Positions 7,705 through 64,000 of a DNA stretch of 64,000 nt are shown piece after piece. This stretch comes from Macrostomum lignano (taxonomy: Eukaryota), in contig NIVC01001249.1 of assembly GCA_002269645.1 (NCBI GenBank), forward strand, positions 1 to 64,000, written 5' to 3'. Each line of letters starts with the position of its first letter. The first letter of the stretch is position 1. The notes under the pieces are model-generated. The model had not been told where the DNA came from. It did not search any database and saw only the letters and a list, made by a program, of their open reading frames with translations. The translations under genes were made by a program, and so were the position numbers.

Positions 7705-8286
<582 letters not shown>

Positions 8287-10400: not shown

Positions 10401-10640
10401 TGTCATTCGGGACTTGGGTTGGTGAGATTCGGGATACTATTACAAAGATCTGGAATAGGGATTCCACAGGGATTCTGGATTTTGGGATTTGAAAGCAGAA
10501 TTCTAGAATTCAGAATCGAGGTTCTCAGGATACGGAATCAAGACTATTGAGCAGTACGCATGGGATCTGGAGAATGATTGGACACAGCTTCATTGAGGGT
10601 CTTTCCGAATGAACAGATTCATTAAGGTAAAAAGCCTCAC

Positions 10641-21323: not shown

Positions 21324-21394
21324 GTGAGCAGTCTGGATCTGTGATTCCATGATTTTAGGGACTTGGGATATTAGAGTCGGAATATTGGGATTCC

Positions 21395-37720: not shown

Positions 37721-37771
<51 letters not shown>

Positions 37772-38220: not shown

Positions 38221-38228
38221 GTGAGAAA

Positions 38229-38582
38229 TCAATTACAGACAGTTGCAGTCAATTACAGACAGTTGCAGTCAATTACAGACAGTTGCAGTCAATTACAGAC
38301 AGTTGCAGTCAATTACAGACAGTTGCAGTCAATTACAGACAGTTGCAGTCAATTACAGACAGTTGCAGTCAATTACAGACAGTTGCAGTCAATTACAGAC
38401 AGTTGCAGTCAATTACAGACAGTTGCAGTCAATTACAGACAGTTGCAGTCAATTACAGACAGTTGCAGTCAATTACAGACAGTTGCAGTCAATTACAGAC
38501 AGTTGCAGTCAATTACAGACAGTTGCAGTCAATTACAGACAGTTGCAGTCAATTACAGACAGTTGCAGTCAATTACAGATAG
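38229..38582. repeat. Near-perfect 20-bp minisatellite (AATTACAGACAGTTGCAGTC), ~18 copies, intronic
   Basis: Direct inspection. Confidence 0.97.
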
Positions 38583-38674
38583 TTGCTCAGTTTGGTACTT
38601 ACTCAAACTACTCAGAGTAATAGCAGCAGATGCAGAATTCTCAAAACACATCATCACTCCTCACCGCCATGCAG

Positions 38675-38862
38675 CAGTGTTCGTGAGCCGTTTCAACGAC
38701 GCCAAGGACCAGCTGCGCTATCAGTCTGTGCTCTGCGTCGGCGACCAGATCCTGGAGATCCAGGGACTCCCAACCGATGCCATGGACCTCGCTGACATTT
38801 GCAGTTCCATCGCCGACTGTCGGACTCTCGTGCTTCGGGTGCGCAGCGAGTTTGCCTGGTAG
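38675..38862 (+). CDS. PDZ-domain protein, coding exon 2 (C-terminal half of PDZ)
   Basis: Tandem acceptor gcag|cag| (38675 or 38678, both in frame). VFVSRF...VLCVGDQILEIQG...LVLRVR contains the PDZ GD.ILE.NG-type motif; stop TAG at 38860-38862. Confidence 0.8.
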
Positions 38863-40773: not shown

Positions 40774-40845
40774 GGTCCCATGGTGTAGCGGTTAGCACTC
40801 AGGACTCTGAATCCTGCGACCCGAGTTCGAGTCTCGGTGGGACCT
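40774..40845 (+). tRNA. tRNA-Gln-CTG: tRNA-Gln (anticodon CTG)
   Basis: 72 nt; acceptor stem GGTCCCA/TGGGACC, anticodon arm CAGGA-CT-CTG-AA-TCCTG, T-arm GAGTTCGAGTCTC, followed by an oligo-T Pol III terminator. Confidence 0.97.
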
Positions 40846-42053
40846 TCTTTTTATTATTTAACGTTTTTGCCTTCCTTCTAATCTTTATCAGAAATTTTTT
40901 AATTTTTATACTTATTAATTAAGAAAAGAAGGATAGTTTTATTACATTTTTGGTTTGCAAATCTCTTTCAAAATTTAACACATTTCATATTAAAGCCCTT
41001 ATTTGTGACTGCCACTGTGAAAATTACCATTTAAACTAGATTCTAATACAAGAGTAATAATAGATAAGATTGAGAAAGCTATGAATAGTATTTTTGAATT
41101 TTTGAATAGCATTTATTTTATAAATGCTTTTTCATGAATTTTTTTATTCCTAACAATGAGCCGGGTTTAAAGCTAGTACATATCAACTATCCGATATGTA
41201 TCGAAAACAAACTTTAGCAAGCGAAAAATGCTTTGTAAAAAACGAAACCAATTAGAAGGCTTAAAAGGTTCTTCTATTATGAAGATTTACCGTTTAAGTT
41301 CATAGTATTTCCTATCTACCCTCCCCCTGCTGTCTCTTATGCTTTCGAATGTAGTTGACATCAAGAACTTATGACCCAAAACCCCAGCGGGTGATGTTGA
41401 AACTTGCATGATGAGGCTGATCGACAGTTGCTCCTTTCCCTTGGTTTCGCAGTCCACATTCACAGCACAGATAGTTTATGCAATATGCGCGTCACTAACA
41501 GCTTGGCCAAAACAGTCAAGAGACACGCCTCGTTAATAATAATTAGCTTTGTATGACGACCAAGACTGACACAGAGCTTGTTGAACAAGCATCGTAGCAT
41601 CGTACGTGTAGTTGCCATGCGGTTGGTAGGGCCGATGGATCGATTTGATTCGAAGAAATGGCGACAGCCGCCGCCCAGGGGATGTTGAAGACGTCAAGCT
41701 CGCAGCAGGGAAATTCGGGACTACGCACGAGACCCCGCGCGCAGTGTGCCATAAGCCGAACAAAGACTAGTATTCTGTTGTTTCGCCACAGGAGGCCCTC
41801 AGCAACTAATTTTTATTGTCTTGCGCCGTTCTGCCAGAGCCGTCCGCCTTCGGTTTATGGGCAAAGATCGCCAAATCCTGATGCCATCGCCTTGGTTGCC
41901 GGCACGAGAATGATTCGTTTTCCCCAGACTGGCTGCTATCAGCAAGACAAAATCAAGTCTTTGTTTTGGTTATCCCAAATCGATTTACAGAAGTGCTCGG
42001 GTGGCACCCAAAGGTCGAAGAAGAGCATCTTGAAGAAGAGCCCTAAGAAAGGC

Positions 42054-43185
42054 CCCAGTTCCCAGTTGGCGTCCCAGTTCCCAGTTGGCGCCTCAGTCCC
42101 AGTTGGCGCCCCAGTCTCAGTTGGCGCCCCAGTTCCCAGTTCCCAGTTGGCGCCCCAGTCCCAATTGGCGCCCCAGTTGGTGCCGCAGTCCCCAGTTGGC
42201 GCCCCAGTTCCCAGTTGGCGCCCCAGTTCCCAGTTGGCGCCCCAGTCCCAGTTGGCGCCCCAGTCCCAGTTGGCGCCCCAGTTCCCAGTTCCCAGTTGGC
42301 GCCCCAGTCCCAGTTGGCGCCCCAGTTGGTGCCGCAGTCCCCAGTTGGCGCCCCAGTTCCCAGTTGGCGCCCCAGTCCCCAGTTGGCGCCCCAGTTCCCA
42401 GCCCCAAGTTGGCGCCCCAGTTCCCAGTTCCCAGTTGGCGCCCCAGTCCCAGTTGGCGCCCCAGTTGGTGCCGCAGTCCCCAGTTGGCGCCGCAGTTCCC
42501 AGCCCCAAGTTGGCGCCCCAGTTCCCAGTCCCCAGTTGGCGCCCCAGTCCCCAGTTGGCGCCCCAGTCCCAGTTGGTGCCGCAGTCCCCAGTTGGCGCCC
42601 CAGTTCCCAGTTGGCGCCCCAGTTTCCAGTCCCCAGTTGGCGCCCCAGTTCCCAGTTGGCGCCCCAGTTCCCAGTTGGCGCCCCAGTTCCCAGTTCCCAG
42701 TTGGCGCCCCAGTTCCCAGTTGGCGCCCCAGTTCCCAGTTGGCGCCCCAGTTCCCAGTTGGCGCCCCAGTTCCCAGTTGGCGCCCCAGTTCCCAGTTGGC
42801 GCCCCAGTTCCCAGTTGGCGCCCCAGTTCCCAGTTGGCGCCCCAGTTCCCAGTTGGCGCCCCAGTTCCCAGTTGGCGCCCCAGTTCCCAGTTGGCGCCCC
42901 AGTTCCCAGTTGGCGCCCCAGTTCCCAGTTGGCGCCCCAGTTCGCAGTTCCCAGTTGGCGCTCCAGTTCGCAGTCCCTAGTTGGCGCCCTAGTCCCTAGT
43001 TGGCGCCCCAGTTCCCAGTTGGCGCCCCAGTTCCCAGTTCCCAGTTGGCGCCCCAGTTCCCAGTCCCTAGTTGGCGCCTCAGTCCCAGTTGGCGCCCCAG
43101 TTCCCAGTTGGCGCCCCAGTTCCCAGTTGGCGCCCCAGTTCCCAGTTGGCGCCCCAGTTCCCAGTTGGCGCCCCAGTTCGCAGTT
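42054..43185. repeat. 19-bp GC-rich minisatellite (GTTGGCGCCCCAGTTCCCA)
   Basis: Direct inspection. Confidence 0.95.
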
Positions 43186-46377: not shown

Positions 46378-47079
46378 CTAGCAGCGTCGAAGAAAACGTA
46401 GCGGTGAGGCTGGTGCCGCCTCTGCGGTTGGCGGTGGCAGCTCCAGGGGAAGCGGCAGAGGCTGACGGCCGAGCAGCTGCAGCACCTGCCGACGGAAGTT
46501 GGCGCTGATCGCGTAGAACACGAAGAAGCTGCAGGCGCTGTCAACGGTTACCAGCAGGTAGCTGACGGGCACCATCCAGTCTGGGAAGGAGCGGTGCAGC
46601 CCGAAGGTGATGAAGGTCGCGCCTGGCAAGTCGAAGACGATAAAAATGGTGGCCAGCACCAGTACAATGCGGGTGACGACGAGGCCGGACCTTCTGGCGG
46701 CAGCGGCTGGGGCGACGGAGGCGGCGACTTCGCCAGGCTGGTTGCCCCTGGCAACGGCCAGCTGAGCGGCGGTGACGCCGGATGCCAGCAGGATCAGCAG
46801 CACGGGCAGGTAAGTCTGAGGCGTCCTCGTCAGCGGCAGCATCACGTCCACCAGGAACCGCTCGCTGCCGCCGGCCGCCAGACGCCACGCGGCGAAGGTG
46901 CCGGGCCCGGCGGCGGCCGCGACCAGCAGCAGGACGCCGAAGCCGCACAGCTGGAAGCGGCGCGTCAGCCAGCGGCGGAAGCCGATGGGCTTGAAGGTGG
47001 CCAGACAGCGGAACACGCTGATGCAGGCCGTCCACATGTTCTTCACGGCCACGCTGAACGACACTCAGCAGTAGCTCAC
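46378..47079 (-). pseudogene. Rhodopsin-like 7TM receptor copy A, exon 2 (TM3-TM7), premature stop
   Basis: Acceptor aaaccag|GTG. Codon 5 is TGA (47067-47065) where paralog B has TGG; hydrophobic helices and a FYAISANFRRQV helix-8 motif. Confidence 0.8.
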
Positions 47080-47896
47080 CTGGTTTTGTAGAGTTTTGGG
47101 TGCGAGAAACGAGTTTTTAAAAATCTAGAGTTTTAAGTGTGGAGTTTTCCTTAGACCTGCTCGACTTATATATGTCCAATATAGTAATAGGCTCGTCATG
47201 ATGATACTTCTGAAAGTACTAGCAGGCATAGTAGTCGTAGGTATAGGCCTTCAGCAACTCCACTACTCTAATGAGTTTGGCAGACATTTTGAGCAGCGTA
47301 CAAGACGAAGATGCTCAGAATTTACCGAACAATGCAACTTGTCACCAAGTTGGTTCTGCCAAATATCCCGAGAGCCAACATCCGGGATGCGACTCTCCAG
47401 GAGTTGCTGCTCTCTAGTCGGAATCAATTAAACAATCCAGCTGAGCCGATGCGAGCTTACCCTACGCCTGTAAGAGACTCATCCGGATCAAATGATGCGC
47501 TCATGACAAGATGATCTTTTCAGGGTATTAGTTATCAAACTGGAGAATAAATTTGCACATTATAACCTCGGGTAAATTTCAAACTAAATCGGCATCCATT
47601 GCGGAGAATTTGAATTTCTAATTATTTCGGTGCAAGATTTCAAATCTCTCTTGGTTTCTAGGAAAGCTCTCAGGGACGATTATTCAGGTCGGTTCTTTTA
47701 CGTCGTTGCCGAATAAATGCTGCCATGTCTTTTCGTGGCATCCTCGAGGTTCTGCAAAATTTGACCCAGGCCAATTTTCGTCTGCAAGCCTCAAAGGAAT
47801 CGAATTAGGGGTCGTGGCGGATGAGTCAGACGCGTTTGCTGCAGAAAGGACCCGCAGATTATGCAATTAATTGATAAAGCCATCGAGCCAGCTCAT

Positions 47897-48211
47897 ATCG
47901 AACAACGTGTTGGCTAGTGACGCCTCTAGAGTGTGCTCCGTCATGAGCAGCGCCAGGTCGAACGGCATATAGCCGCAGGTGGCCAGGCAGTAGTTGACGT
48001 GGGCCAGCTGCATCAGGATGAGGCCGACGTCGAACACATCGCGGTTGCGCAGGTACTTGCGGACCAGCAGCGTCAGCGGCAGGCAGCTGAGCATCAGGCC
48101 GGCGGCGGCCGCGGGAATGGTGACGGCCCGCACTGCGATGTACAGCCTGCTGTATCCGGGACCTGTGGCGTTGCTGGCCTCGGGGCCATGGGTGCTGAAG
48201 GAGCCTGACAT
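47897..48211 (-). pseudogene. Rhodopsin-like 7TM receptor copy A, exon 1 (N-terminus with NAT sequon, TM1-TM2), splice donor lost
   Basis: ATG at 48211. GAT|atgagc where paralog B has GAT|gtgagc, so read-through hits TAA at 47869-47867. Confidence 0.78.
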
Positions 48212-49439: not shown

Positions 49440-51670
49440 TCAGACTTCCAGAGGTACCAGCAACTTCACTGGCCGTCGAAGATGCGTAGCAGCTCGACCA
49501 CTTTGAGAACTGGCCACCCGCAGTAGGCATGAGCAGGCGACTCCATCGCGACCCTGGTGCACAGCTTCGACAACCGCAAGCTTCCATGGAAGTCTTGCTA
49601 ATCCGGCATCCATCACTAACACTACGTCACCAACTCGTATTTCCCGATTCGATGTTCGACCGTCTTTGGATGATCGCTCACGGAGGGCCAGAATGTACTG
49701 TGCTTGCCACTCCTTCCAGAACTTGTTCAGCAAATGTCTGGACTTTCGGAGCCTTTCGGGAAGCGGCAGGACCATTGAAACTTCCGCTTCGTCCTCTGGT
49801 TCTTTTGTCAGGCGGTGCAGAACGAGGAAATGGCCAGGTGTGATGACTTCTGATTGCTCGCCGGAAGACACAAAACCAAGCGGTCTTGAGTTTACAACCG
49901 CTTTCGCCTCACAGATTACTGTCGACAGCTCCTCGACGGTCAGGAATGCCCTTCCGATTGTCTTCTTGAGCACTGATTTCACTACGCCGACCAGTCTCTC
50001 GTAGAAGCCTCCCATCCATGGAGCTCGCTCGGGAATGAATGTCCAAGTGACTCGGCGGCTGCTCAAAAAATATTGACCTGTTTGAGTCCGTAATGGAGCT
50101 TCTTCTGCATCCAGTAGCCTGGCCGCCGCATGGAAGGTTTTGAAGTTGTCAGAGATAATTGACGGTACACCTCGGCGGACACAGGAGCGTCTCAGGCTCA
50201 GAAGGAATGACTGCGTTGTCAAGTCAGTGACGAGTTCGAGATGCACTGCTGGTGTGCTAGTACAGGTCAACAATAGAATGTAGGCTTTATGTTGGCCGTC
50301 ATCCTCCCCCCTGCGGTAGATGAGGGGGCCGCAGTAATCGAGGCCAACATGCTGGAAGGCTCTGCCCGGTGACGCACGGGACGTAGGTAACTGCGCTTTT
50401 TGGGAGATCTTATACGACAGGCCTTGAAGACGTATGCACGTGTTGCATGCTTTCTGTCGTCCCTTCAAGAGCCAGAATTTCTCGCGAATTCAGAGTAACG
50501 TTGCTGCCACACCACCATGACCAACCTTGTGGTGCGCCTCTCAGATCAACAGCCGCTGGAAATCGACGTCTGTCGGACAGAGAACCGGCGATTTTTGGTG
50601 GGTCGAGAGCTTGGCTCACCGAGTCGACCTGCACTGCGAAGGACTCCCCCTTGACTTGACTTAGCTGCAGGGGGCGTCCGGCGGATGCAGCGAGGAGGCG
50701 GAGGAGACCGCCCATTTCGTTAGCCCCTGGCAGGACTCCCCTTGATCTATAAATAGCCACAGATTACAATTGAGCAGCGTGCGGGCTGTGCCCTCCTTGA
50801 GACATCGTATGTCCAAACTGAAATCTCGTGCCTGCAGTGACTTGATCCAGCAGTCCTCCGCTTGTAACAACTCCGTAGCCGTCAACTCGCCGATGCTTTC
50901 TCGCCTCTTCTGTTTGATTGTCTTGATAAAGCGAAACACCCAAGCAGTGACGCGCAACAGTTTCGTCAGGGTGCTGAACCGTTGCAGCTCAATTATGGAG
51001 TGGACTCTGTAGCTGAACATCGGGTGTCCTCGCGTGAGTTATCGAACAGCTGGGCTCGTCTTCTCTAGATATGGAATGCTGATCGCACATCGCAGGTTGT
51101 TCTGGCCAGTGCAGGTCCAGTTCAGACAGCCACGTTGGACCTCGAAACCAGGAGGACGTTGCTGTGAACATCCTAGGGATTACTGGTCGCGTAGCAATGT
51201 CTGCTGGATTGTCCTTTCCTGGACAGTACCGCCATGATTCCGGGGCGACTATCGAACGAATTTTGATTGCACGGTTTTGAATGAACGGTTTCCACAGCTT
51301 GTGCTTCGATTTGAGCCACCAAAGGACGTCCATGCTGTCGCTCCAACAGACGATCGGGAAGTCCGGATATTCTGCGCGAATCTCACTGATCTCACTGCAA
51401 CTCTGCTGAAAGAGTAGCTTCGGTCGTGTCAGCAATGGACACAGAAGACCCAGAGCGTTGAAGGTTTTGGAGAATGCCGACAACGTTGCCCGTTTAGTCA
51501 AATTTTCTCTTGCAAGATTGGCTGCCGGGTGGTCGCTAATCGAAAGAATGAAGGCATCCTTCTGCGGAGCCCACTGCATACCTGAGACTTTAACCGACGA
51601 CTCGTCAGGCGCCGTCACCCCACAACCTTCCTCACGAGCTACAGTGTTCAGGGCTGAATAAATATGAACT
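49440..51670 (-). mobile_element. Degenerate BEL/Pao LTR retrotransposon pol remnant (partial RNase H/Peptidase_A17 region, HHCC integrase, DDE core, DUF5641-like C-terminus)
   Basis: WSDSMDVLWWL...WRYCPGKDNPADIATR, RFSTLTKLLRVTAWVFRF, HKVGHGG..*IREKFW..CNTC, GLDYCGP/SDN/GGFYERLV, FWKEWQAQYILALRER. Stops, frameshifts and internal deletions; gag/protease/RT core absent. A possible 3' LTR starts at TGT 49428 (minus), end unresolved. Confidence 0.93.
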
Positions 51671-51684
51671 TTTTCCGCCACAAG

Positions 51685-52285
51685 TAGATATAAGTATGAG
51701 TAGATATGAGTAGATACGAAGAGATGTGAGTAGTTGTAAGTAGATGTGAGTAGACATGAGTAGATAAGAGTAAATATGAGTAGATACGAGTAGATGTGAG
51801 TAGTTTTGAGTAGATGTGAGCAGATGTGAGCAGATGTGAGTAGATATGAGTAGATGTGAGTAGATATGAGCAGATATGAGTAGATGTGAGCAGATGTGAG
51901 CAGATGTGAGTAGATGTGAGTAGATATGAGAGATATGAGTAGATATGAGTAGATATGAGTAGATATAGTAGATATGAGTAGATATATGTATATATGAGTA
52001 GATGTGAGTAGTTGTAAGTAGATGTGAGTAGACATGAGTAGATAAGAGTAAATATGAGTAGATACGAGTAGATGTGAGTAGTTTTGAGTAGATGTGAGCA
52101 GATGTGAGCAGATGTGAGTAGATATGAGTAGATGTGAGTAGATATGAGCAGATATGAGTAGATGTGAGCAGATGTGAGCAGATGTGAGTAGATGTGAGTA
52201 GATATGAGCAGATTTGAGTAGATATGAGTAGATATGAGCAGATGTGAGTAGATGTGAGTAGATATGAGTAGATGTGAGTAAATGT
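51685..52285. repeat. 10-bp minisatellite (GAGTAGATRT) at the 5' break of the BEL element
   Basis: Direct inspection; includes a ~295-bp higher-order duplication. Confidence 0.93.
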
Positions 52286-52734
52286 GAATAGATTTTCTCA
52301 TTATCTGGTCCGAAAGTTGGTGATTCTAAAGTAGCAAGTATTAGTGTGTCATTTGACCTCAAACTGGATGTTATAAAAATCTAATCAACCACAGTAGATG
52401 GGGCGCACAGTTGCCAGGTGCCGAATGGGAGGCTCCTCATGTTCCGATGTCAGATAGAAAGAAAAGTGTGACAGGTGTGCCCCGCAGGTTTCTTTTATAA
52501 AAAGCATTGAGAAGATAGAAGGTTCTGTACCGCGTGACCGGTAAATATGAGCCGAGCCACCTTTGAAAATTTAATGTTATTATTTACACAGAACGAGTTT
52601 CTACGGATTAACCAGTTTGAGTATCAGTTGCGCTTCGGTTTGCGAATGTTCCGGAACAAAAAAATAAGTATTTCACTCTGCTGTACTACTTATAACTGTA
52701 AGTAGTCGGCATTGTGTTGGCGCACTCGAGTAAG

Positions 52735-54309
52735 TCAAGAGGGACGAGTCTTTGTTCCCACAAGAGGCCGATTCTCCTGCTGCCGAGGTTGACCGTCGCG
52801 ACCGCTTTTAGGGGCGTCTCTGTTCGCCTGGCAGCGGAGCAGCTGGCGCAGCTGGCCTCGGAAGTTGGCGCTAAAAGCGCCGAAAATTGCAAAGTGAACC
52901 GCGCCGTGACAGGTCACCAGCAGGTCGTCGACGGGCACCAGCCAGTCCTGCAGAGGGCGGAACTGTTGGACAATCACCATGACAGCGCCAGGCAGTTCCA
53001 GCGCTGCGATGGTGCCAGCAGACAGGCAAACAATGAGCAGCGTGTTGCACCAGTTGCGGGCCTGGACGGTTGCGGCTGCCGTTGCGACTGCGTTGGAATT
53101 TGCCGCTGCGGCTGCGGTGGCGGCAACGGCTGCAGCGGCAGCGGCGCCTGCCAGCCTGGAGTTGGCGGCGGCGCGCGACTCCATCGCGTTGAAATTTCTA
53201 GCAACTCCGCCCGCTGTGTCAGCTGCTTGGTAATTTGCCGTCGCGACAGTGGCATCATCAGCGGCGAACGCGTAGACCTTGGCAGCAATCGCCGCACAGT
53301 CGGCTTCGATATCGTTGGAATCCGCGGCGGCAGCGGCGGCGACGGTGGCAGCGGTTTTGATCAATGCTTTCGCTGCGCAAACGTTGGCAGCGGTGGCTGA
53401 GGTAGCGGCGGCTGCAGCAGCAGCGGCTGCAGTGACAGCAGCTGATTCTGCAGAGATAGCAGCTTCGAATGCGAAAGCATTGGAGGCAGCGGCTGCCGCA
53501 ACAGCCGAGGCAGAAGCCGCCGCGGCAGCGTTGGCAGCTTTGGTGAAAGCGCAGTCGGTTGCCAATGCACTGGCGGCTGTGGCGAAATTAGCGGCTGCTG
53601 CGGCGGCAGCGTCAGCGGATTTGGCTGCGCGAGCGCAAGTCGTTGAGGCAGAGCCACGCTCTGGTAGAGCACGAACTGCCTTGGCAGCCTTGGCCGAGTA
53701 TTGATTGGCCGCGGCTGCAGCTCTAGCAGCTTCGATCGCGTCAGTAACGTCGGTCATCGCTTTGGTTGAACTGCCGTCTTCGTCCTCGCTGGACATAACC
53801 GAGGCATTGAAGCATTCGGCAGCTGCGAGAGCTGCGTTCTCGCATGCAGCTGCGGCAGCTGCTGCGGCTGCAACTGGGTCTTCTGTGGCCGGAATCGCGT
53901 TGGTATTGGCGTCCGCTCCTGAGCTGTGCGTGGATGAGGGACTTAACGAGGCAATATTATCGCCGGGTCGGTTGGCCCGGGCAGCGGCTAGCTCAGCTAC
54001 CGTTAGAGCACTGATCAGCACGATCAGCGGCACGGGTAGGTAAGTCTGAGTTGTCCTTGTCAGAGGCAGCATCGTGTTCACCAGGAACTGCTCGCTACCG
54101 CCAGCCGTCAGACGCCAACCGGCGAAAGCGCCAAAGACAACGGCGCTCGCGACCAGCAGCAGGACGGCGAAGCTGCACAGCTGGATGCGGCAAGTCAGCC
54201 ATCGACGAAATTTCATCGGTCGGGAGATAGCCATGAAGCGAAACAGGCAGGTGCACATCATCCACAGGTTCTTCAGGGAGAGGCTGAGCAAGAACCAGCA
54301 GTAAATTGC
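52735..54309 (-). CDS. Rhodopsin-like 7TM receptor copy C, exon 2 (TM3-TM7) with a ~295-aa Ala-rich third intracellular loop
   Basis: Acceptor ccacccacag|GCA (phase 0). AIYCWFLLSLSLKNLW...LFRFMAISRP aligns with copies A/B; the ORF is continuous to TGA at 52737-52735. Confidence 0.85.
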   Translation of the reverse strand, partial: AIYCWFLLSLSLKNLWMMCTCLFRFMAISRPMKFRRWLTCRIQLCSFAVLLLVASAVVFGAFAGWRLTAGGSEQFLVNTMLPLTRTTQTYLPVPLIVLISALTVAELAAARANRPGDNIASLSPSSTHSSGADANTNAIPATEDPVAAAAAAAAACENAALAAAECFNASVMSSEDEDGSSTKAMTDVTDAIEAARAAAAANQYSAKAAKAVRALPERGSASTTCARAAKSADAAAAAAANFATAASALATDCAFTKAANAAAAASASAVAAAAASNAFAFEAAISAESAAVTAAAAAAAAATSATAANVCAAKALIKTAATVAAAAAADSNDIEADCAAIAAKVYAFAADDATVATANYQAADTAGGVARNFNAMESRAAANSRLAGAAAAAAVAATAAAAANSNAVATAAATVQARNWCNTLLIVCLSAGTIAALELPGAVMVIVQQFRPLQDWLVPVDDLLVTCHGAVHFAIFGAFSANFRGQLRQLLRCQANRDAPKSGRDGQPRQQENRPLVGTKTRPS

Positions 54310-54568
54310 CTGTGGGTGGCAGGACAGCACCAGTGCTGGGGCATCGCGATGGCTTCTCAGATTTTGGGAAAGAAACTCATCGAAGCTCACTTTACACCGT
54401 CCGGAAGGCCAAAAGTCAAAAGGGCCAAAAGTCAAAAGGTTGTTATGATGGGGTTGATGAGTACCAAATTATGTTGGTGTCATGGATTCGCTTTGAGTAT
54501 TACTTCTAGAATGTGTCCGGGGGTATAGAAAACGTCTGGCCAGTGTCTATATAGGGCTAATTGCAATA

Positions 54569-54890
54569 GGTGGTAACTATCCGGGTGGTTAGAGCGTCTG
54601 ACTGACAACTGGAAGGTCGGGGGTTCGATTCCCGATCCTACTGAAACAAATTGAGTTCTTGAGCAAGACACTTAACTCTGCATTGCTTCAGTTTACCCAG
54701 CTGTAAAATGGGTGCCAGCATTAGCTGGGGTAATTGAGGTTGGATGTGGCGACCCCTCAGTCCTTGGACTGAACAACCGTACGCAGCCTTCGGATGTACC
54801 GCGGTTGCACATCTGGCCATCCACAGGGCCCTGTTTGGATTCAACCGCCCTGCAGGGAGGCCAGAGCGGTAAACATGGCCCTCTCAGGTC
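54569..54890 (+). mobile_element. tRNA-derived SINE in the receptor C intron (antisense)
   Basis: tRNA-like head with B box GGTTCGATTCC (54622-54632), then TCTTGAGCAAGACACTTAAC...TTTACCCAGCTGTAAAATGGGTGCC, resembling conserved metazoan SINE central domains (recalled, not searched). Ends approximate. Confidence 0.7.
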
Positions 54891-55006
54891 ATCGCTGCTC
54901 AAAAAAGTGTTCAATGTCGCCCAAAATTTTTAGTGCGCAACCGTGACATCCATGTAGTGTTTATTGGAGCGAATTATTGACATGCCGAAAAAACATGTAA
55001 ACTTAC

Positions 55007-55327
55007 AGCAAACGAAACATTATGCTTAAAGCTTGCCCACCGAGTGTGTCCCGACTTGAGCAGCGCCAGTTCAAAGGCAACATAGCAGAGGGCGGCCAGA
55101 CAAAAGTTTGTAAAGGCCAGCTGCATCAGGATGAGGCCGATGTCGACCGGCTCAGGGTTGCGCCGGTACTTGCCAATCAGTATGAGCAGCCACAGGCAGC
55201 TGAGCAACAGGCCAGCGGCTGCCACGGGAATGGTGACGGCCCGCACCGCGATGCAAGTCCTGCTGCAGCCGAGGCCCGTGCCGTTCGCTAGGCTTGCTGC
55301 AATGCTGAACTGCTGGTTTGGCGCCAT
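55007..55327 (-). CDS. Rhodopsin-like 7TM receptor copy C, exon 1 (N-terminus with NGT sequon, TM1-TM2)
   Basis: ATG at 55327, donor GCT|gtaagt (55007/55006, phase 0); 107 aa homologous to copy A exon 1. Confidence 0.85.
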
Positions 55328-56035
55328 GTTTAGCGGTTGGTTTCCTAGATTTCTGCCACTGACGTCTGACAGATGAGCACTCTAGACTATGTATAAGTTG
55401 AGGACTATTTTTCTGATGAGGCGTATGTTGTCTATGGCTAACTCGTAAAATCATGTTTTGATTTCTGAAGATTTTAGTTTTAATCAATTATAGAACCAGA
55501 ATTGGTTCAGAACTTTTCGAGTTTTAGTCTATTTTCATAAACTGTTACAGAACCTTGTTCTGGACAGTAAACTTTTAATGCGATTTTAACATTTAAAAAA
55601 GCAATTTTAAGCAATTTTTTAGTGTTGCACAAGTATTACAAATAATATCTAAAAAGAAATGTTCTAGCTGTTTATATAATCTTCAATATAGCTCGTAGCT
55701 TTTACGTCGTAGAGTGGTGTGACCAATTTTTATTGTTAATATTATACTAATAGTTTTAAACTTTTAATTCTTGCCAGAGTGCCGAAGTAACTAGGCGTGA
55801 TAACTGATAACAGATATCCAGAACAGTTAAAAAACATTAAATAAACTTTTAAAAATAGTGGACAAAAATAATTTTTCTTTAACAAAAGCGGGTTTAAAAT
55901 GGATTAAAATCTACGATCCGATGATACAATAAAAAACCAGATCACATAAAGTTGCGTGCAAAGTGCTTTCAGTTCAGTAGAAAGTTAAACTAAGGAATCT
56001 TAATGCATTTTAAGACAAGACTCATTCACTAGCTT

Positions 56036-56380
56036 GTACCCCTCCCCGTAGCTGAACCCCTCCGACCGCGCCTTTCCACCAAAATATCTACCCCCAGCCC
56101 GGCAGCCCAATTTCTGTTGGTTCGTACCCCTCCCCCTAGCTGAACCCCTCCGACCGCGCCTTTCCACCAAAATATCTACCCCCAGCCCGGCAGCCCAATT
56201 TCTGTTGGTTCGTACCCCTCCCCCTAGCTGAACCCCTCCGACCGCGCCTTTCCACCAAAATCTCTACCCCCAGCCCGGCAGCCCAATCTCTGTTGGTTCG
56301 TACCCCTCCCCCTAGCTGAACCCCTCCGACCGCGCCTTTCCACCAAAATCTCTACCCCCCAGCCCGGGCAGCCCAATTTT
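56036..56380. repeat. Four copies of an 88-bp C-rich unit
   Basis: Unit starts at 56036, 56124, 56212 and 56300. Confidence 0.95.
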
Positions 56381-56928
56381 TACTGTGAACACCGGCACCA
56401 CCGGATCTTCCTGCGCGACACCGCAGCACCAGCTGCCCGTCGTAGCCAGGGGGCTAAGCGGAATGTGCGGCGACGCCCAGATACCCCTGCAGCTAAATAA
56501 AGTAGTCAAGTGTGCTTAGGACAATAAACTGGAGTGTATTTAAATTAAAGAGTTGCAAGCTGGTATTGATGAATGGTTAGAAATCAGTGCTTTGTTAGCT
56601 CGGTAGTTCAAGGACTAAAGAGTTTTAGTTCTTTTTCAGAACGAAGTAGCTGAAACATTCCTACTAGATTTTGTGTTTGGATTAATGCAAAACAAAAAAA
56701 ATGTTTGAGTTTTAAAAGTCAAGCACGAACCCACAAACGAGCATATTTGTGATACACGTTAATTTTCGTCTCAGTTAATCTTTAATGATTAGGAAAATCG
56801 CGTAGAATGCCTCATTTAATCTCTAAAAACTCGTATCTCAACAAGTCAAGGTGAACGCGTGTGCAAAAGCTATATAAAGCCAAGTAAGCAACGAAATTTG
56901 AATTGCAGAGCAGCACGTCAGTGACACA

Positions 56929-57819
56929 CTACTGCAAGTAGGACTGCGATAGCCGCTGATAGTGCAGACGGAGCTCCTGGCGCTGTCTTTCATCTTCAGA
57001 GGCGTCAGACGAGCCGGCCAGATCCGGTAGGCCCCGCGCCGGACTTTCGGGGATATTTTGCGAGCCCAACAGTCGAAGCGATGACAGATCACCGCCTGCG
57101 GCTCCGTGGATGAGGCTCAGACCCAGGCCGCTTCCTCCACCCACGCCAACGCCGCCAAGTCCAGCGCTGGGCGGAGCCGGGGCGCGTCCGCAGTTCAGCA
57201 GCTGGCCGACTTGGCGACGGAAGTTGGCGCTGAACGCGTAGAACACGAAGAAGCTGCAGGCGCTGTCGACGGTCACCAACAAGTCGCTGACGGGCACCAT
57301 CCAGTCTGGAAGCTGTTTGTGCAGCTCGAATGTGATGAAGATGGCGCCAGGCAGCTCAAAGATGGAGAATGAGATCGCCAGCACCAGCACGATGCGGGTG
57401 GCGGTGAGGCAGCTGACTGAACTCGTCGACACGGCCTGTTGGTTAGCTGCGCCAGAAGCGTCGTTAGCCTCGCCAGGCCGGTTGCCCCTGGCGACGGCCA
57501 GCTGAGCGGCGGTGACGCCGGAGGCCAGCAGGATCAGCGGCACGGGCAGGTAAGTCTGAGGCGTCCTCGTCAGCGGCAGCATCACGTCCACCAGGAACCG
57601 CTCGCTGCCGCCGGCCGCCAGACGCCACGCGGCGAAGGTGCCGGGCCCGGCGGCGGCCGCGACCAGCAGCAGGACGCCGAAGCCGCACAGCTGGAAGCGG
57701 CGCGTCAGCCAGCGGCGGAAGCCGATGGGCTTGAAGGTGGCCAGACAGCGGAACACGCTGATGCAGGCCGTCCACATGTTCTTCACGGTCACGCTGAACA
57801 ACACCCAGCAGTAGCTCAC
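56929..57819 (-). CDS. Rhodopsin-like 7TM receptor copy B, exon 2 (TM3-TM7 plus C-tail)
   Basis: Acceptor aaaccag|GTG; intact ORF VSYCWVLFSVTVKNMW...FYAFSANFRRQV. Confidence 0.85.
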   Translation of the reverse strand: MSYCWVLFSVTVKNMWTACISVFRCLATFKPIGFRRWLTRRFQLCGFGVLLLVAAAAGPGTFAAWRLAAGGSERFLVDVMLPLTRTPQTYLPVPLILLASGVTAAQLAVARGNRPGEANDASGAANQQAVSTSSVSCLTATRIVLVLAISFSIFELPGAIFITFELHKQLPDWMVPVSDLLVTVDSACSFFVFYAFSANFRRQVGQLLNCGRAPAPPSAGLGGVGVGGGSGLGLSLIHGAAGGDLSSLRLLGSQNIPESPARGLPDLAGSSDASEDERQRQELRLHYQRLSQSYLQ

Positions 57820-58854
57820 CTGGTTTTGTAGAGTTTTTGGTGCGAGAAACGAGTTTTAAAATGTGTGCTTATAGCCATCAGCTGACTAACCTCTTCAGAC
57901 ATGCTCTCTACAATGGCCTATATAGGTTTTTCAACGTCTCTTACCTTCCTTAACAAGAGTGGGAAACGACCAGCTAGCCAAGAACCCTCGTGCTGCCCTT
58001 GGGGCTCTAAAAACGTGGACTACTGAACAGCCGAGTGATGAAGAGCATAGTATTTAGGCATTCGACCTTCACTTTTTTCTAATGCGGATAGAATCTATTG
58101 CATTGAATGTAATTTTATAAACATAGCAACTTCAGAGATGCAATTTCCTGAGTATGACTTGTTTGCCTTCATCTCACACGAATGTCTACTGAGTGGCGGC
58201 TTGGATGGTCCAAACCAAAGCTAAAAAACAAGCCAAAGCTGCTAATTGATTTTTTTCTGTTTGAGAAAGGCGAGAAGCACGGAAATCAATTGGACCTCAT
58301 CATTGCCTTTAATCTTCATCATGATGAAGCGCTCACGGACCAAAATTAGTTTATTGTAGGCTGTTTTGCTTTGAGTCGGCAGCTGTTTACCGCGGCATTT
58401 TACAGAAACAATGCCTGCTTATAGAAAGTGCCATATCACGTTAGTCTATTTCTATTACACTTGATGACATGGCCAATTCAATCAGGATATTTAAAGCTCA
58501 AAATCGTTTTGTCTAAAGCAGGAAAAAAGCAAGCAGGGTGCCAAAAGTGTGATTTTCTCTCTTTTTTTAAACACCAGGGCACCAGGGCTACCTTTTGCTC
58601 TTTGCCTTTTGCCCGAGCCTTCTATTCATAGTAAATCAAAGAGGAAAAGTCAAAGAGCAAAACCAGGGTTGAAAGCTTGCTTGTTCAGAACCTAAATTAA
58701 AAAGAAAAACCACTACCAAAGGGTTGCCCGGAGAGGAAAAATGAGGAAAAGTAGGCATTTCATAGAAATTTAACTAGCCTATCTAATCATCCCTCTCGTC
58801 CGTCCGGTCGTCCGGTCGTCCGATTTTTTCATAAAACTGAGAATTTCCCACAGG

Positions 58855-60134: not shown

Positions 60135-62342
60135 TGATGTAACCACGCTCTGGTCGCGGGATAGGGCATGGGAACTTTTTTGAAAGTGCCTCCTATCCCG
60201 TACACCCCCCTGCACAGAGCTGTCGAGACTCGGCCAGGTCTCCGACCAGGCCTGGATACTCGCGCTCTGCTGCACCCCCTGCTGCCTTGGCTCCGTCTCC
60301 CCTGCCGCCACACTTGCCTTTCCGGAGCTCCCTGTCCCTCTCTGTACCCCACCCCCTCCACCCTATCTCCCCTGCGCTCTACCCTATTCTTCTTGTACTC
60401 TTCCTGTCCCCTCTCTTTTTGTCTCCCTCTGCACTCTTTTCCTGCGCTGTCCCCTCTTTCCCTATGTCTACTTACAGTATTTTGTGTGCTCACGTCTCCC
60501 CATCCCCTCTCAAACTCCCAAACGGTGACGCAAGTCGTGTGACCCCTTCTTCCCCTCGATGACTCATCGATGACTCACCCCTTCCTTGCGCAACCTTTTC
60601 TCACGCCATTGTTCTCCTCCCCAATTTTCTCATGCGACACCCACCCCACCTCCGCTTCTATTGTTCTCGTTTTTGATTCTTTTGTTCTCTTTACCCACAC
60701 CAATTATCACATTTTCTCCGATTTTCTCTTTCTTTTGTTCTCGTTTTCGCACCTAATTATCACCTTTTCTTCAATGTTTGCTTTTCTATTGTTCTCGATT
60801 CTCCCCAATTATCCCCGATTTCCAATTCCTTTGTTCTCGACCCCAGCCCTATTGTTCTCAATGTTTGCTTGCGCAACACTTTCGCGACCACCCGCTGCGC
60901 CAATTATCCCCCCACCCCACCTCCGGATTGCGCAATTTCCCTATTTCTCATGTTGCTATGCCGGTCTCATGCTTCTCATCATGACTCATTCTGACGTCAT
61001 TCTGCCGGCAGCCAATCAGAGAGAGGGAGCCATGGTAACGACCTTGGAGAGGGGACTGTGAAGGCTATAAAAGGAAGCGATTTCGGCAGGAGAATCCTCA
61101 GACTGTTGGTCTCCTCGTCCTTCTTTGGACTTGCGGTCAGACACTGCTCTGACCTTCCCGTCTATCAGACGAACCCCTGCCGGTCCGCGGTCTGTTACCG
61201 CCAAGTTATCCTTAGCTCCCCGAGTGAGCTCGCCTATCGGCCAGCGGTCTGATACCGCCCAGCATCAACAGCATCGCCTGATCTACACCAGCGCCTAGTC
61301 GCTTCAGCGCATCGCCGCTTCACCGTCTGCCTGACTGCAGCCTACAGCCGCCCTCGGTCACTCCGCCTCTCTCTCTCTCTCTCTGTGCAGCTGCCGGTAA
61401 GTTCCTGTTACTAATTTGTGCTCTAATCGCCTTTGCTTATCCGGGGTTTGCCTATTTTGCCATTGCTTAATTAGAGAGCTGAGCCAATTGTGATACCGTA
61501 ACTTTTGCTGTATTTTACTCAATAGTGAAGCCGCCTAATTGCCTGACCATTTGCCCAAGGGCCTAATTATTAACTATTAACTAACCTCATCATTATTCAC
61601 TCTTTCACCATCATTTCACTCATGGCTTGCTAAGCCTTTCCCCCGGGGTGGCAAAGCATAAGGAAGTTTGGGTAAGCTAATGGCCTCTCCCCGTGCAAAG
61701 CTCGCCTGTGAGTGCGTGCTGCGGGGCCCTGTGTGCGTGCAGTAGAGGGATTAGCGAGTCTTGGCACAGAATGGCAGTAGGAAGGTTGCAACCCCATGCT
61801 GACGCGTCCCTTCGCCCTGAGCAATCTAAACTATAGACAGTACATGTTCGCCTCATACTACTCTTAGTAATCAAAGTCGCAAGTCAGCCTCGCTCACAGC
61901 CACAAAGGATCCCCTGCTGAGAAATCCTCCGGATTGAGCCCAGAGTTCCCGATCATGCCCCAAGCAGAGTCCCTGTACTCGGCTGCATGTGTCTCCCCTG
62001 TTAGCCTAAACCTCCTGGTAACCATTCCAGGCGGGGCTCTAGCCTCGAGAGGTCTGGTAGAAAGATCCAGGTGCGCCAGGTCACATAGAGTGGTGGCAGC
62101 CACTCGGTCATATTATGACCGAGTGACCAATTATTGCACCTTGGCTACAGGTGGGGTCCATGTGGGTCCTTGGCCCTCTGGTCACAAAGCGCTACCAAAG
62201 CTATCAATCATGTGGGCGGGACAGTCTGGTGCTGGAGGTCCATCAGGTCATTGCCCGGTCATAGGCAGCCTACGGTCATTGCCCCTCTAGTCATGCGTTC
62301 GTCTCTTAACGGAGCGGACAGGCGACAAGGGCGGTTACATCA
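60135..62342 (+). mobile_element. 2208-bp solo-LTR-like insertion (TG...CA, 10-bp terminal inverted repeat, 4-bp TSD TGAG), probably Ty3/Gypsy type
   Basis: TGAG|TGATGTAACC ... GGTTACATCA|TGAG; internal promoter motifs; no coding domain recognised. Confidence 0.8.
60982..61072 (+). promoter_or_regulatory. LTR promoter: AP-1 (TGACTCA), CRE (TGACGTCA), CCAAT and TATAAAA
   Basis: TGACTCA 60982, TGACGTCA 60992, CCAAT 61012, TATAAAA 61066; two more TGACTCA at 60560 and 60571. Confidence 0.6.
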
Positions 62343-63825
62343 TGAGCACATTTCGCGATGGCTGGACGTAAAGAGAAAAACAGTGTATTCTATCAGGCGT
62401 CGCTATGAAATCACGGGACGCCGGGACCGCGCACCACGGGTGGAGATCGAGCATCGAAAACTGGAAGAGCAACGCATTCAACTGCTTCTTTCATCACTGG
62501 ATAGCAATCCTCTAATGACGTTGAAAGAGTTGCGAAGCAAGCTGACTGACACCTATCCAGGCCTCGAAGTGAGTACTACAACTGTAAGCCGGACCTTGGA
62601 CAGACAGCTGATTACATTGAAGTGCCTTGGTCGAGACGCCGATGTGCCAGTGGTCAGGAATAGTCCTGAAAACCGGGCATGCCGACGAGAATTTGCTCAC
62701 TGGCTCACTGGTGTTCCACCTGAACGTCACCTCATCTATGTTGATGAGACCGGTTTCAACATTTGCACTCGCCGGTCCCGAGGACGTGGACCGGCGAGAC
62801 GTGGCCAGCAGACGTGGCCAGTAAGTCCGACGTGTTTCAAGCATTTGTCGAGGCTGTAAACATGCTGTAAACAATCGAGATGATGTAGACGATGCCGACA
62901 ACTTCTTAGTCATCATTGATGGAGCTCGCTTCCATAACAGGCTGAGGATCCCCCAGCAGTTTGAGCTGAACTGGCAGGTTGCAGTACTGCCTCCATATTC
63001 TCCATTTCTGGACCCGACCGAGTGGGCGCATTCCTGTTTGAAGGCGGCCACCAAGCGGTAATTTGCGCAGCCACAGGTGCAAATCGAATTGGACAATCCA
63101 CTGCCAGAGACAACACTGCTGGAGTGGCGCGTACTCGTTCTTCATCGGATTGCGGAGGAGGCAACGGCTGAGATTACAGTAGCCAAATGCGGTGGCTGGT
63201 TTCGGCAGACGCTTCGCTTCATCACGCACTGCTTAAACGAGGAAGAAATTCTCTGAACATTGATCGGGTTTGATTTCAATCTATCCAACACTGTTTTGAG
63301 AGACACGATTGTTCTCGGCTTATACTGTATGCCATGGTTTTGCCTTTGCCTGTTTTGATTGGTTTCTCTGAAATCAAAGTGTTAATGTCAAACGTTTTTT
63401 TGATATGCCATCTATTTGTAGGCGTTATTTTAGTGAAGTTATTTGTGCTTTATTAGCAAAGCATAATTAAAATATTTCAAAAAATGAATGACTCGAGCTG
63501 TACCATTCTTACGATTTTTAGGCTTAGGACATGTACATAGGATATAAAATTAACGTAGAATTCTAGTTTTCTAAACAAAAAGCTCTACGAATATTAATCG
63601 AACTACAAAAAAGGCAAAGTCACATCGAAAGATAAAAAGATGAAAGATTTTTGTGCTGAAATAATGAAAAACTTCTACCTTGTCACATACCTGTGCGCAC
63701 TCTGCACCTTGTGAATTGGCCTTCATGAGAGAGAATTGCACATCATCTGAATTCTCTACATGCTGAAATCAGAAAAGGACCCGCAGATTATGCAATTAAT
63801 TGATAAAGCCATCGAGCCAGCTCAC

Positions 63826-64000
63826 ATCGAACAACGTGTTCGCCAGTGACGCCTCTAAAGTGTGCTCCGACAAGAGCAGCGCCAGGTCGAACGGCATGTA
63901 GCCACAGGTGGCCAGGCAGTAGTTGACGTGGGCCAGCTGCATCAGGATGAGGCCGACGTCGAACACCTCCCGGTTGCGCAGGTACTTGCGGACCAGCAGC
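63826..64000 (-). CDS. Rhodopsin-like 7TM receptor copy B, exon 1 (partial, runs off the window)
   Basis: About 95% identical to 47897-48070, with intact donor GAT|gtgagc (63826/63825); splices in phase 0 to 57819 across a 6.0-kb intron. Confidence 0.82.

What the first reader, a model, noticed from the sequence alone, without database searches (positions are those of the whole stretch)
53070..53955. 7TM receptor with a ~295-aa, roughly half-alanine third intracellular loop
Seen: where paralogs A/B have a 20-25-aa TM5-TM6 loop, copy C has a continuous in-frame insert about 45-50% Ala. It uses mixed GCN codons (not a DNA tandem repeat) and has periodic Cys, Phe, Asn, Asp and Thr; both flanking TM regions and splice sites are intact. 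The nearest plausible GT/AG pair would shift the frame, so it is probably coding. Known: Ala-rich chains form long helices (type I antifreeze proteins, helical bundles), and TM5/TM6 extensions control G-protein access. Inference: a novel receptor architecture with a cytoplasmic helical rod or bundle (scaffold, mechanical or thermal sensor, or signalling block).
Basis: partly seen in the sequence, partly recalled or inferred. Interest (0 to 1): 0.75.

Follow-up and report, generated by a model that had tools for sequence, protein, structure and literature searches.

The report
Alanine-rich giant loop in flatworm receptor
One member of a tandem family of orphan seven-helix receptors in the flatworm Macrostomum lignano carries a real, transcribed ~300-residue, 45%-alanine low-complexity expansion of its third cytoplasmic loop. 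It looks like repeat slippage in a loop that tolerates it, not a new folded domain.

Summary
The core observation holds. Window 53068-53955 (minus strand) encodes 296 in-frame residues, 45.3% Ala, between TM5 and TM6 of a two-exon 7TM gene. Its paralogs have 21-52-residue loops there.

The window is Macrostomum lignano contig NIVC01001249.1. The gene is already in GenBank as hypothetical protein PAA70312.1 (BOX15_Mlig022205g2). That annotation is built only from RNA-seq transcripts. It splices exon 1 to exon 2 as I predicted and keeps the whole insert. Two further assembly copies encode the identical insert.

No internal GT donor scores like a real one. Two UniProt models that cut pieces out use poor splice sites.

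The insert has no homolog in 1.8 billion representative proteins, no significant residue periodicity and no significant internal repeat. AlphaFold2 predicts helices at low confidence (pLDDT about 51-54).

All paralog loops are A/N/S/T-rich, and paralog E has its own in-frame imperfect repeat expansion. In the insert, 56% of non-Ala codons lie one nucleotide from GCN.

Best reading: an in-situ, slippage-driven expansion of a permissive ICL3, giving a helix-prone, non-globular loop. A gating role for G-protein access is inferred by analogy only. The folded rod or bundle is not supported. Interest is modest.

The parts
55007..55327 (-). Gene C (Mlig022205g2) exon 1: start ATG at 55327, N-terminus with an NGT site, TM1 (55172-55252) and TM2 (55058-55147). 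Ends ...NVSFA before donor GTAAGT.
   Evidence: The junction FA|AIYCW is identical in GenBank PAA70312.1.
54310..55006 (-). Intron 1 of gene C (697 nt, GTAAGT...CCACCCACAG, phase 0). Unique sequence with no copies elsewhere in the window.
53974..54309 (-). Exon 2, 5' part: TM3 (54229-54309, with YCW and FRF in place of DRY), TM4 (54115-54195) and TM5 (53974-54045).
   Evidence: Hydropathy and AF2 helices. About 60% amino-acid identity to paralogs.
53068..53955 (-). The Ala-rich insert: 296 codons, 45.3% Ala, spliced-protein residues 226-521. The whole ICL3 is residues 220-527 (53050-53973).
   Evidence: Retained in PAA70312.1, PAA61665.1 and the 508-aa CDS on NIVC01001248.1.
52735..53049 (-). 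Exon 2, 3' part: TM6 (52969-53049, ELPG), TM7 (52861-52938, FGAFSANFR in place of NPxxY), short C-tail and stop codon at 52735-52737.
56929..57822 (-). Paralog A exon 2, with a 26-residue ICL3. Its exon 1 lies at about 63844-64000 and runs beyond the window end.
46378..47082 (-). Paralog B exon 2, with an ICL3 of about 21 residues. It has an in-frame TGA at 47065-47067. Its exon 1 is at about 47897-48175, with the donor GT changed to AT at 47895-47896.

Best explanation
Gene C is an expressed, lineage-specific member of a tandem array of at least five very divergent rhodopsin-like 7TM genes in Macrostomum lignano. The array order is D, E, A, C, B.

The ancestral third intracellular loop of the family was short and A/N/S/T-rich. 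In gene C it grew in place to about 308 residues. The growth came from repeated in-frame slippage or unequal exchange of imperfect GCN-rich 9-21-nt units, followed by point mutation.

The result is a cryptically simple, helix-prone but non-globular cytoplasmic loop. It is tolerated because ICL3 is structurally permissive.

Shown here:
- The insert exists, is in frame, and sits in a spliced transcript-derived CDS.
- It is identical in three assembly copies.
- It has no homolog and no confident fold.
- The loop is a recurrent expansion site among the paralogs.

Inferred only:
- Its likeliest effect, if any, is length-dependent gating of the G-protein/arrestin pocket, as described for long ICL3s.
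- Its 48 Ser/Thr residues could serve as phosphorylation sites.
- Its C-terminal part may extend TM6 as a helix.
For: - **Identity and transcript.** The window is NIVC01001249.1 of assembly Mlig_3_7. PAA70312.1 (640 aa, on the 226,653-bp contig) equals my spliced model with the full insert. That GenBank annotation was built only from StringTie/TACO and de novo transcripts, with TransDecoder ORFs (PMC5730564).
- **Other copies.** The identical insert is found in copies on NIVC01001248.1 and NIVC01002007.1. There are no differences across 1575 bp of exon 2.
- **No credible intron.** No donor inside the insert scores above 4 bits, against about 6 bits for real donors.
- **Gene under constraint.** dN/dS for C against A, D and E is about 0.5 at dS of about 0.6, with no stop or frameshift in 631 codons.
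- **In-situ origin.** Both ends of the C loop align to the short D/E loop (ADxxTN... and ...ANSxAR-xW). All paralog loops are A/N/S/T-rich, with lengths of roughly 21-26, 52 and 308 residues. Paralog E has its own imperfect (AAC GCC)n expansion with periods of 6-30 nt.
- **Codon evidence.** In the insert 56% of non-Ala codons are one step from GCN, against 33% in the rest of the gene (Fisher p = 3e-6). All direct-repeat spacings are multiples of 3.
- **Repeat-prone genome.** 31% of the window is tandem repeat.
- **Not a domain.** The exhaustive HMMER search found only models of the same locus plus one spurious cuticle protein. There are no Pfam or PDB sequence hits, AF2 confidence is low, and there is no periodicity or internal repeat.
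Against: - I saw no read-level RNA data and no protein evidence. A StringTie model shows the region is exonic in the assembled transcript, but gives neither abundance nor proof of translation.
- No ortholog is available, so selection on the insert itself is untested.
- The zero differences among the three copies extend into downstream non-coding DNA. They therefore reflect recent duplication or conversion, not constraint.
- dN/dS of 0.5 is higher than the 0.22-0.32 seen among A, D and E. This is compatible with relaxed selection on C.
- The absence of same-codon runs means the slippage history is inferred, not directly visible.
- The gating function rests only on analogy with mammalian receptors.
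Confidence: 0.68

Rival explanations
1. The insert is a genuine folded cytoplasmic domain: a long helical hairpin, bundle or rod that extends TM6. It would have a specific scaffolding or sensing role.
For: - AF2 assigns helix to nearly all of the insert.
- One helix (residues 475-555) runs continuously from the insert into TM6, with the locally highest pLDDT of about 62-64.
- Pro and Gly are scarce (10 of 296).
- From my own knowledge, Ala-rich helices can pack, as in Maxi antifreeze protein. PDB 4ke2 appears as a non-significant Foldseek hit (E = 5.3).
Against: - Mean pLDDT is 51-54 and pTM 0.27-0.41.
- No significant structural match.
- No heptad, 3.6-residue or 11-residue periodicity.
- Only about 16% bulky hydrophobic residues, and sequence entropy of 3.08 bits against 4.02 in the rest of the protein.
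- No homolog anywhere.
- The Pro/Gly deficit needs only the rarity of G:C to C:G transversions from GCN codons (inference).
Confidence: 0.1
2. Gene C is a decaying or functionless paralog that is still transcribed. The Ala-rich tract would then be neutral repeat junk with no signalling role.
For: - C is the divergent member: about 55% amino-acid identity and dN/dS about 0.5, against 0.22-0.32 among A, D and E.
- C alone gives no Pfam hit.
- Neighbour B is visibly broken.
- The genome is highly repeat-prone.
Against: - 631 codons are intact at dS of about 0.6 from the other paralogs, with pN (0.26) clearly below pS (0.42).
- Splice sites are intact, and a spliced transcript model exists.
- All three assembly copies keep the frame, except for one 1-bp deletion in exon 1 of the NIVC01001248.1 copy. 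That deletion lies among similar single-base gaps and looks like an assembly error.
Confidence: 0.17
3. Part or all of the Ala-rich region is removed by splicing, as in UniProt models A0A1I8GRT0 (removes 354 nt, 53304-53657) and A0A1I8I303 (removes 729 nt, 52948-53676, including TM6).
For: - Both models exist in public databases, and both use in-frame GT..AG pairs.
- The acceptor at 52948 has a reasonable pyrimidine tract (4.8 bits).
Against: - Their donors score -1.3 and -1.0 bits, against about 6 bits for the family's real donors.
- The two models disagree with each other.
- One model fuses genes A and C and deletes TM6.
- The transcript-derived GenBank CDSs on three contigs keep the insert entirely.
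Confidence: 0.04
4. The insert is an assembly artefact.
For: None found. It was considered only because the assembly is PacBio-based and the region is GC-rich and of low complexity.
Against: The same sequence is present in three contigs of Mlig_3_7. It is also present, in the parts retained, in two protein models that I believe derive from the independent ML2 assembly.
Confidence: 0.01

Closest known systems
Class A GPCRs with long, disordered third intracellular loops (muscarinic M1-M5, alpha2-adrenergic, beta2AR; ICL3 autoregulation model of Sadler et al. 2023, PMC10033409)
   Same: A large insertion exactly between TM5 and TM6, with no defined fold and high sequence divergence between paralogs. 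Its length is far above the threshold of about 45 residues proposed for gating G-protein access.
   Different: At about 308 residues it is at or beyond the top of the range I recall for vertebrate receptors, and 45% Ala is extreme. It is helix-prone rather than Pro/Gly/Ser-rich. The host receptor is an orphan with no DRY or NPxxY motif. No signalling data exist.
Dopamine D4 receptor exon-3 VNTR (48-bp repeat in ICL3; from my own knowledge)
   Same: ICL3 lengthened by in-frame repeat slippage. The loop tolerates large length changes.
   Different: The DRD4 repeats are clear 16-residue Pro-rich units and vary in length within populations. Here the units are degenerate (TRF scores of 56 or less) and the three assembly copies are identical in length.
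Flatworm-specific orphan rhodopsin-like families (PROF1/Srfb, Srfa, Srfc, Rho-L, Rho-R, fwRhods; PMC6114109)
   Same: A lineage-restricted, expanded, highly divergent rhodopsin-like 7TM family with weak or no similarity outside flatworms.
   Different: Membership in any named family was not tested, because no sequences of those families were on hand. That study's pipeline excluded its M. lignano hits. The best Pfam signal here is the nematode Srw family (E = 8e-6 for A, D and E).
Type I (Ala-rich helical) antifreeze proteins, including Maxi
   Same: A very high Ala fraction with predicted alpha-helix. Both are thought to arise from expansion of GCN-rich sequence.
   Different: There is no 11-residue Thr/Asx periodicity and no sequence hit. 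The segment is an intracellular loop of a membrane protein, not a secreted peptide.
Ala-rich heptad coiled coils (for example Plasmodium vivax MSP3 central domain)
   Same: An Ala-rich, helix-prone, low-complexity segment.
   Different: Heptad periodicity of hydrophobic residues is not significant (lag 7, z = 1.8; spectral power at 102.9 degrees is 22, against a 95% shuffle maximum of 45).

Membership tests
Rhodopsin-like (class A) 7TM receptors | Seven transmembrane helices with an extracellular N-terminus | tested here: met
   Hydropathy peaks and AF2 helices fall at seven positions: 23-56, 63-91, 97-136, 139-175, 199-219, 528-555 and 567-604. An N-terminal NGT sequon is present. TM3 and TM7 are weakly hydrophobic.
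Rhodopsin-like (class A) 7TM receptors | Significant profile match to a class A or related serpentine family | tested here: inconclusive
   C has no Pfam hit. A, D and E match 7TM_GPCR_Srw, with a best E of 8e-6; the one bit score seen (A exon 2: 21.0) is just under the 22.2-bit cut-off. The family profile against PDB returns only class A GPCRs (GPR52, CCK-A receptor), aligned in register, at E = 0.03-0.3. UniProt names the protein by the PROSITE profile G_PROTEIN_RECEP_F1_2.
Rhodopsin-like (class A) 7TM receptors | E/DRY motif at the cytoplasmic end of TM3 | tested here: not met
   The motif is FRF in C and FRC in A, B, D and E. Only the Arg is kept.
Rhodopsin-like (class A) 7TM receptors | NPxxY in TM7 and CWxP in TM6 | tested here: not met
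   TM7 reads FGAFSANFR in C and FYAFSANFR in the paralogs, with no Asn-Pro. TM6 has ELPG: the Pro is kept but Cys-Trp is absent.
GPCRs with an autoregulatory long ICL3 (Sadler et al. 2023) | ICL3 longer than about 45 residues, without a defined structure | tested here: met
   ICL3 is 308 residues. pLDDT is mostly below 55.
GPCRs with an autoregulatory long ICL3 (Sadler et al. 2023) | The loop occludes the G-protein pocket and tunes coupling selectivity | not testable with these tools
   This needs signalling assays with and without the loop.
Type I antifreeze proteins | 11-residue periodicity of Thr/Asx on an Ala-rich helix | tested here: not met
   The top Thr autocorrelation lags are 3, 35, 16 and 12, all below threshold. 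Lag 11 is not enriched. There is no PDB sequence hit.
Coiled coil | Heptad (3.5-residue) periodicity of hydrophobic residues | tested here: not met
   Spectral power at 102.9 degrees is 22, against a 95% shuffle maximum of 45. Lag 7 gives z = 1.8.
VNTR or microsatellite-type coding repeat | Recognisable tandem units, and length variation between copies | tested here: not met
   Only 2-3 copies of degenerate 9-21-nt units are present. The three assembly copies show no length difference, although the 10-mer array 440 bp downstream does vary.

The most novel reading that the evidence does not exclude
The Ala-rich loop is not merely tolerated low complexity. It would form a stable, very long helical extension of TM6 with helical hairpins packed through small-residue (Ala-coil) interfaces. 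That would give this flatworm receptor a rigid cytoplasmic stalk that either blocks or replaces G-protein coupling, for example by acting as a scaffold or by forcing constitutive silence. It would be a folded domain born de novo from a triplet-repeat expansion inside a GPCR loop.
Probability: 0.08. Interest if true: 0.6.

Novelty: new variant of a known kind. Interest (0 to 1): 0.3.

Why it matters
If the loop is translated as annotated, this would be one of the most extreme compositionally biased ICL3s that I am aware of. It would be a natural test of two questions. How much length and helix propensity can ICL3 absorb? Does loop length alone gate G-protein access?

The paralog series gives a ready-made comparison within one locus, with loops of roughly 21-26, 52 and 308 residues.

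It also shows how a repeat-rich genome, here with 31% tandem repeats, reshapes coding sequence.

A practical point is that automated gene models for this locus disagree. Two UniProt entries excise different parts of the insert, so annotators should prefer the transcript-based CDS.

Beyond that, the gene is an orphan with no known ligand, expression pattern or phenotype. The immediate biological significance is therefore limited.

Tried and rejected
1. **Intron hypothesis.** I enumerated all in-frame GT..AG pairs in the insert. No donor inside the insert exceeds 4 bits, and the two UniProt 'introns' score -1.3 and -1.0. Rejected.
2. **Hidden ~86-residue repeat.** The Cys spacing (59/28/58/27) suggested one. 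A composition-corrected self-alignment scored 29.2 against a shuffle mean of 32.3. Rejected.
3. **Periodicity (3.6, 7 or 11 residues).** Not significant.
4. **Homologs of the insert.** The word-indexed search and the exhaustive HMMER search over 1.84 billion representatives found only models of the same locus, plus a spurious arthropod cuticle protein. Pfam and PDB sequence searches were empty.
5. **Structure.** Both AF2 runs gave low confidence. The Foldseek matches were non-significant, so I did not use them.
6. **Selection from the three assembly copies.** Uninformative, because the downstream non-coding DNA is equally identical.
7. **Wider family relatives.** A profile search found only M. 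lignano proteins. The named flatworm families could not be tested.
8. **Expression data.** A literature search for Mlig022205 found nothing. The Wasik et al. 2015 annotation paper is not in the searchable library.
9. **tRNA-like stretch in intron 1 (about 54575-54640).** No Rfam or ARAGORN hit and no other copies. Dropped.
10. **Exact look-ups.** The 566-aa TTG-start ORF and the 282-aa form of paralog A were not on record.
Full report
**What the window is.** A search with the receptor, insert removed, returned Macrostomum lignano proteins at 94-100% identity. A locus fetched for one hit overlaps window 63264-64000 at 100% identity. Window coordinates therefore equal positions 1-64000 of contig NIVC01001249.1 in assembly Mlig_3_7 (GCA_002269645.1). 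The sequence is eukaryotic and very repeat-rich. TRF arrays with score of at least 100 cover 31% of the window.

**Gene anatomy.** Three paralogous two-exon 7TM genes lie on the minus strand.
- A: exon 2 at 56929-57822, exon 1 at the window edge.
- C: exon 1 at 55007-55327 and exon 2 at 52735-54309.
- B: exon 2 at 46378-47082 and exon 1 at about 47897-48175.

The array continues upstream with paralogs D and E. All share a phase-0 GT...AG intron between TM2 and TM3.

A, D and E are nearly identical to each other (dS about 0.08). C is the divergent member: about 55% amino-acid identity, dS about 0.6 and dN/dS about 0.5, against 0.22-0.32 among A, D and E. B in this window has an in-frame TGA and a GT-to-AT change at its donor.

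**The observation.** Window 53068-53955 (minus strand) encodes 296 residues that are 45.3% Ala. It sits between TM5 (53974-54045) and TM6 (52969-53049). The whole ICL3 is 308 residues, against roughly 21-26 in A, B and D and about 52 in E.
- Ala codons are mixed, and their usage matches the rest of the gene (chi-square p = 0.64). Adjacent identical codons are not in excess.
- TRF sees only short, degenerate units of 9-21 nt. All repeat spacings are multiples of three.
- The sense frame is the only one of six that is open. Only 0.24% of dinucleotide shuffles are open in that frame. The antisense Ala frame has just three stops, so an open frame is weak proof of coding.
- The claimed periodicity of Cys, Phe, Asn, Asp and Thr is not significant. 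An apparent ~86-residue Cys pattern fails a composition-corrected self-alignment test.
None has a credible donor.

**Is the insert in the mRNA?** An exact-sequence look-up showed that the 508-residue product starting at the first Met of exon 2 is an annotated CDS on sister contig NIVC01001248.1. It contains the whole insert. Its 90%-identity cluster also holds two further proteins:
- PAA70312.1 (BOX15_Mlig022205g2, 640 aa, 5'-partial), on the 226,653-bp contig, which is the window's own contig.
- PAA61665.1 (g3, 642 aa), on NIVC01002007.1.

PAA70312.1 joins exon 1 to exon 2 at FA|AIYCW, as I had predicted, and keeps every residue of the insert.

The GenBank annotation of Mlig_3_7 was derived solely from RNA-seq. 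[quoted passage not shown] A spliced, transcript-based model therefore retains the insert. This is indirect evidence. I saw no reads, no expression level and no protein data.

**Conflicting public models.** Two UniProt entries, A0A1I8GRT0 and A0A1I8I303, describe the same locus. To my knowledge they come from the earlier ML2 assembly.
- Each removes a different in-frame piece of the insert: 354 nt in one, and 729 nt including TM6 in the other.
- The second entry also fuses genes A and C.
- Their donors score -1.3 and -1.0 bits, against about 6 bits for real family donors.

I regard both as mis-annotations.

**The three assembly copies.** The copies are 98-99% identical around the gene, in line with the redundancy reported for this assembly. 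Exon 2 shows no differences. So does the downstream non-coding DNA up to a minisatellite, so this says nothing about selection. It does rule out an assembly artefact. It also shows that the tract does not vary in length, unlike the 10-mer array 440 bp downstream.

**What the insert is not.**
- It has no relatives. The exhaustive HMMER search of 1.84 billion representative proteins found only models of the same locus and one spurious cuticle protein. Pfam and PDB sequence searches were empty.
- It has no confident fold. AlphaFold2 predicts almost continuous helix at mean pLDDT 53.7 and pTM 0.41 for the insert alone, and 50.7 and 0.27 for the full length. The best-scoring part is a helix running from residue 475 into TM6.
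- Foldseek finds nothing significant.
- Sequence entropy is 3.08 bits, against 4.02 in the rest of the protein. Bulky hydrophobic residues make up about 16%.
- The most hydrophobic 19-residue stretch (Kyte-Doolittle 1.51) is a poly-Ala run interrupted by Glu and Asn. Its score falls within the range of this protein's weaker TM segments, so hydropathy alone does not exclude membrane association. I judge it an unlikely extra TM segment because the Ala run is short and interrupted (inference).

**Origin.**
- Both ends of the C loop align with the short ancestral loop of D and E.
- Every paralog loop is A/N/S/T-rich.
- E, which differs from D by only about 2% at non-synonymous sites, has gained about 27 extra residues through an imperfect (AAC GCC)n array with periods of 6-30 nt.
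- In the C insert, 56% of non-Ala codons are one nucleotide from GCN, against 33% elsewhere in the gene (p = 3e-6).

Together these point to in-situ, in-frame expansion of GCN-rich imperfect repeats, followed by point mutation. ICL3 appears to be a recurrent expansion site in this family.

**Family placement.** The family is rhodopsin-like only at the edge of detection.
- A, D and E match the Srw family with a best E of 8e-6. A exon 2 alone scored 21.0 bits, just under the 22.2-bit cut-off.
- The family profile against PDB hits only class A GPCRs, in register, at E = 0.03-0.3.
- UniProt labels the protein by the PROSITE class A profile.
- DRY is FRF or FRC, and NPxxY and CWxP are absent.
- The profile search found only M. 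lignano members.

Lineage-restricted orphan rhodopsin families are well documented in flatworms (PMC6114109). Membership in a named family was not tested.

**Mechanism and verdict.** The best-supported reading (confidence about 0.68) is a real, transcribed, lineage-specific low-complexity expansion of a permissive loop. It yields a helix-prone, non-globular ICL3.

Its functional effect is inferred only by analogy. ICL3s longer than about 45 residues gate access to the G-protein pocket and sharpen coupling selectivity (PMC10033409). A 308-residue loop would be expected to do this strongly, or else to be nearly neutral.

The rivals are:
- a functionless but transcribed paralog (0.17);
- a folded helical domain (0.10);
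- partial splicing of the insert (0.04);
- an assembly artefact (0.01).

The finding is real. It is a variant of a known theme, in a gene already deposited as a hypothetical protein, and its interest is modest.

Noticed in passing
window 46378-48175 (minus strand): Paralog B has an in-frame TGA at 47065-47067, replacing the Trp of the conserved YCW motif. Its exon-1 donor is changed from GT to AT at 47895-47896. It is probably a pseudogene in this copy. A B-like partial CDS (PAA70328.1) is nevertheless annotated on sister contig NIVC01001248.1.
   Followed up: partly
L001 968-3004 and 8135-10858 (contig NIVC01001249.1, upstream of the window): The receptor array continues with paralogs D and E. 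ICL3 of E carries its own in-frame, imperfect (AAC GCC)n-type expansion (L001 10335-10429, periods 6-30 nt), giving an Asn/Ala/Ser-rich loop of about 52 residues.
   Followed up: yes
whole window, e.g. 775-2858, 21384-23725, 42052-43185, 51695-52293: About 31% of the window is minisatellite-type tandem repeat with units of 4-98 nt. The 10-mer x60 array at 51695-52293, 440 bp downstream of the gene C stop codon, differs in length between assembly copies.
   Followed up: partly
UniProt A0A1I8GRT0 (P0001) and A0A1I8I303 (P0003), mapping to window 52735-57822: Two public gene models of this locus excise different in-frame GT..AG pieces of the Ala-rich region using very weak donors. One uses an alternative exon-2 acceptor that drops AIYCWFLLSLSLK. 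The other fuses genes A and C and deletes TM6. Both are probably mis-annotations.
   Followed up: yes
window 49440-50468 and 50989-~51650 (minus strand): ORFs with retroelement hallmarks lie between genes C and B: DUF5641 (E = 7e-16) and a weak Pao retrotransposon peptidase hit. This looks like a BEL/Pao-type LTR retrotransposon fragment. Its upstream ORF runs into the 10-mer array.
   Followed up: partly
window 62134-62859 (+): An ORF with a homeodomain-like HTH_32 match (E = 8e-7), typical of DNA-transposon transposases, lies inside the roughly 6-kb intron 1 of paralog A.
   Followed up: no
window 7705-8217 and 10590-11300 (minus strand): Exons of a TPR-repeat gene (TPR_12, E = 8e-24). From memory it resembles kinesin light chain. 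It is unrelated to the finding.
   Followed up: no
window 40774-40845 (+): A single tRNA-Gln (CTG) gene, found by both ARAGORN and Rfam at 64.6 bits.
   Followed up: yes
window 37296-38862 (+): Long ORFs rich in Pro, Gln, Ala and Ser include a (GCA)17 run at 37721-37770. A 20-nt x18 tandem array at 38229-38586 is open in several frames. This is another example of simple repeats inside apparent coding sequence in this genome.
   Followed up: no
L002 (NIVC01001248.1) and L003 (NIVC01002007.1) versus window 51396-56290: Three 98-99% identical copies of the gene C region exist in the assembly. Differences cluster in the upstream region and in intron 1 (54874-54951). The L002 copy has only single-base gaps and one 13-bp gap from window 55052 to 54341, including one gap in exon 1 at 55052. 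These look like assembly errors.
   Followed up: yes
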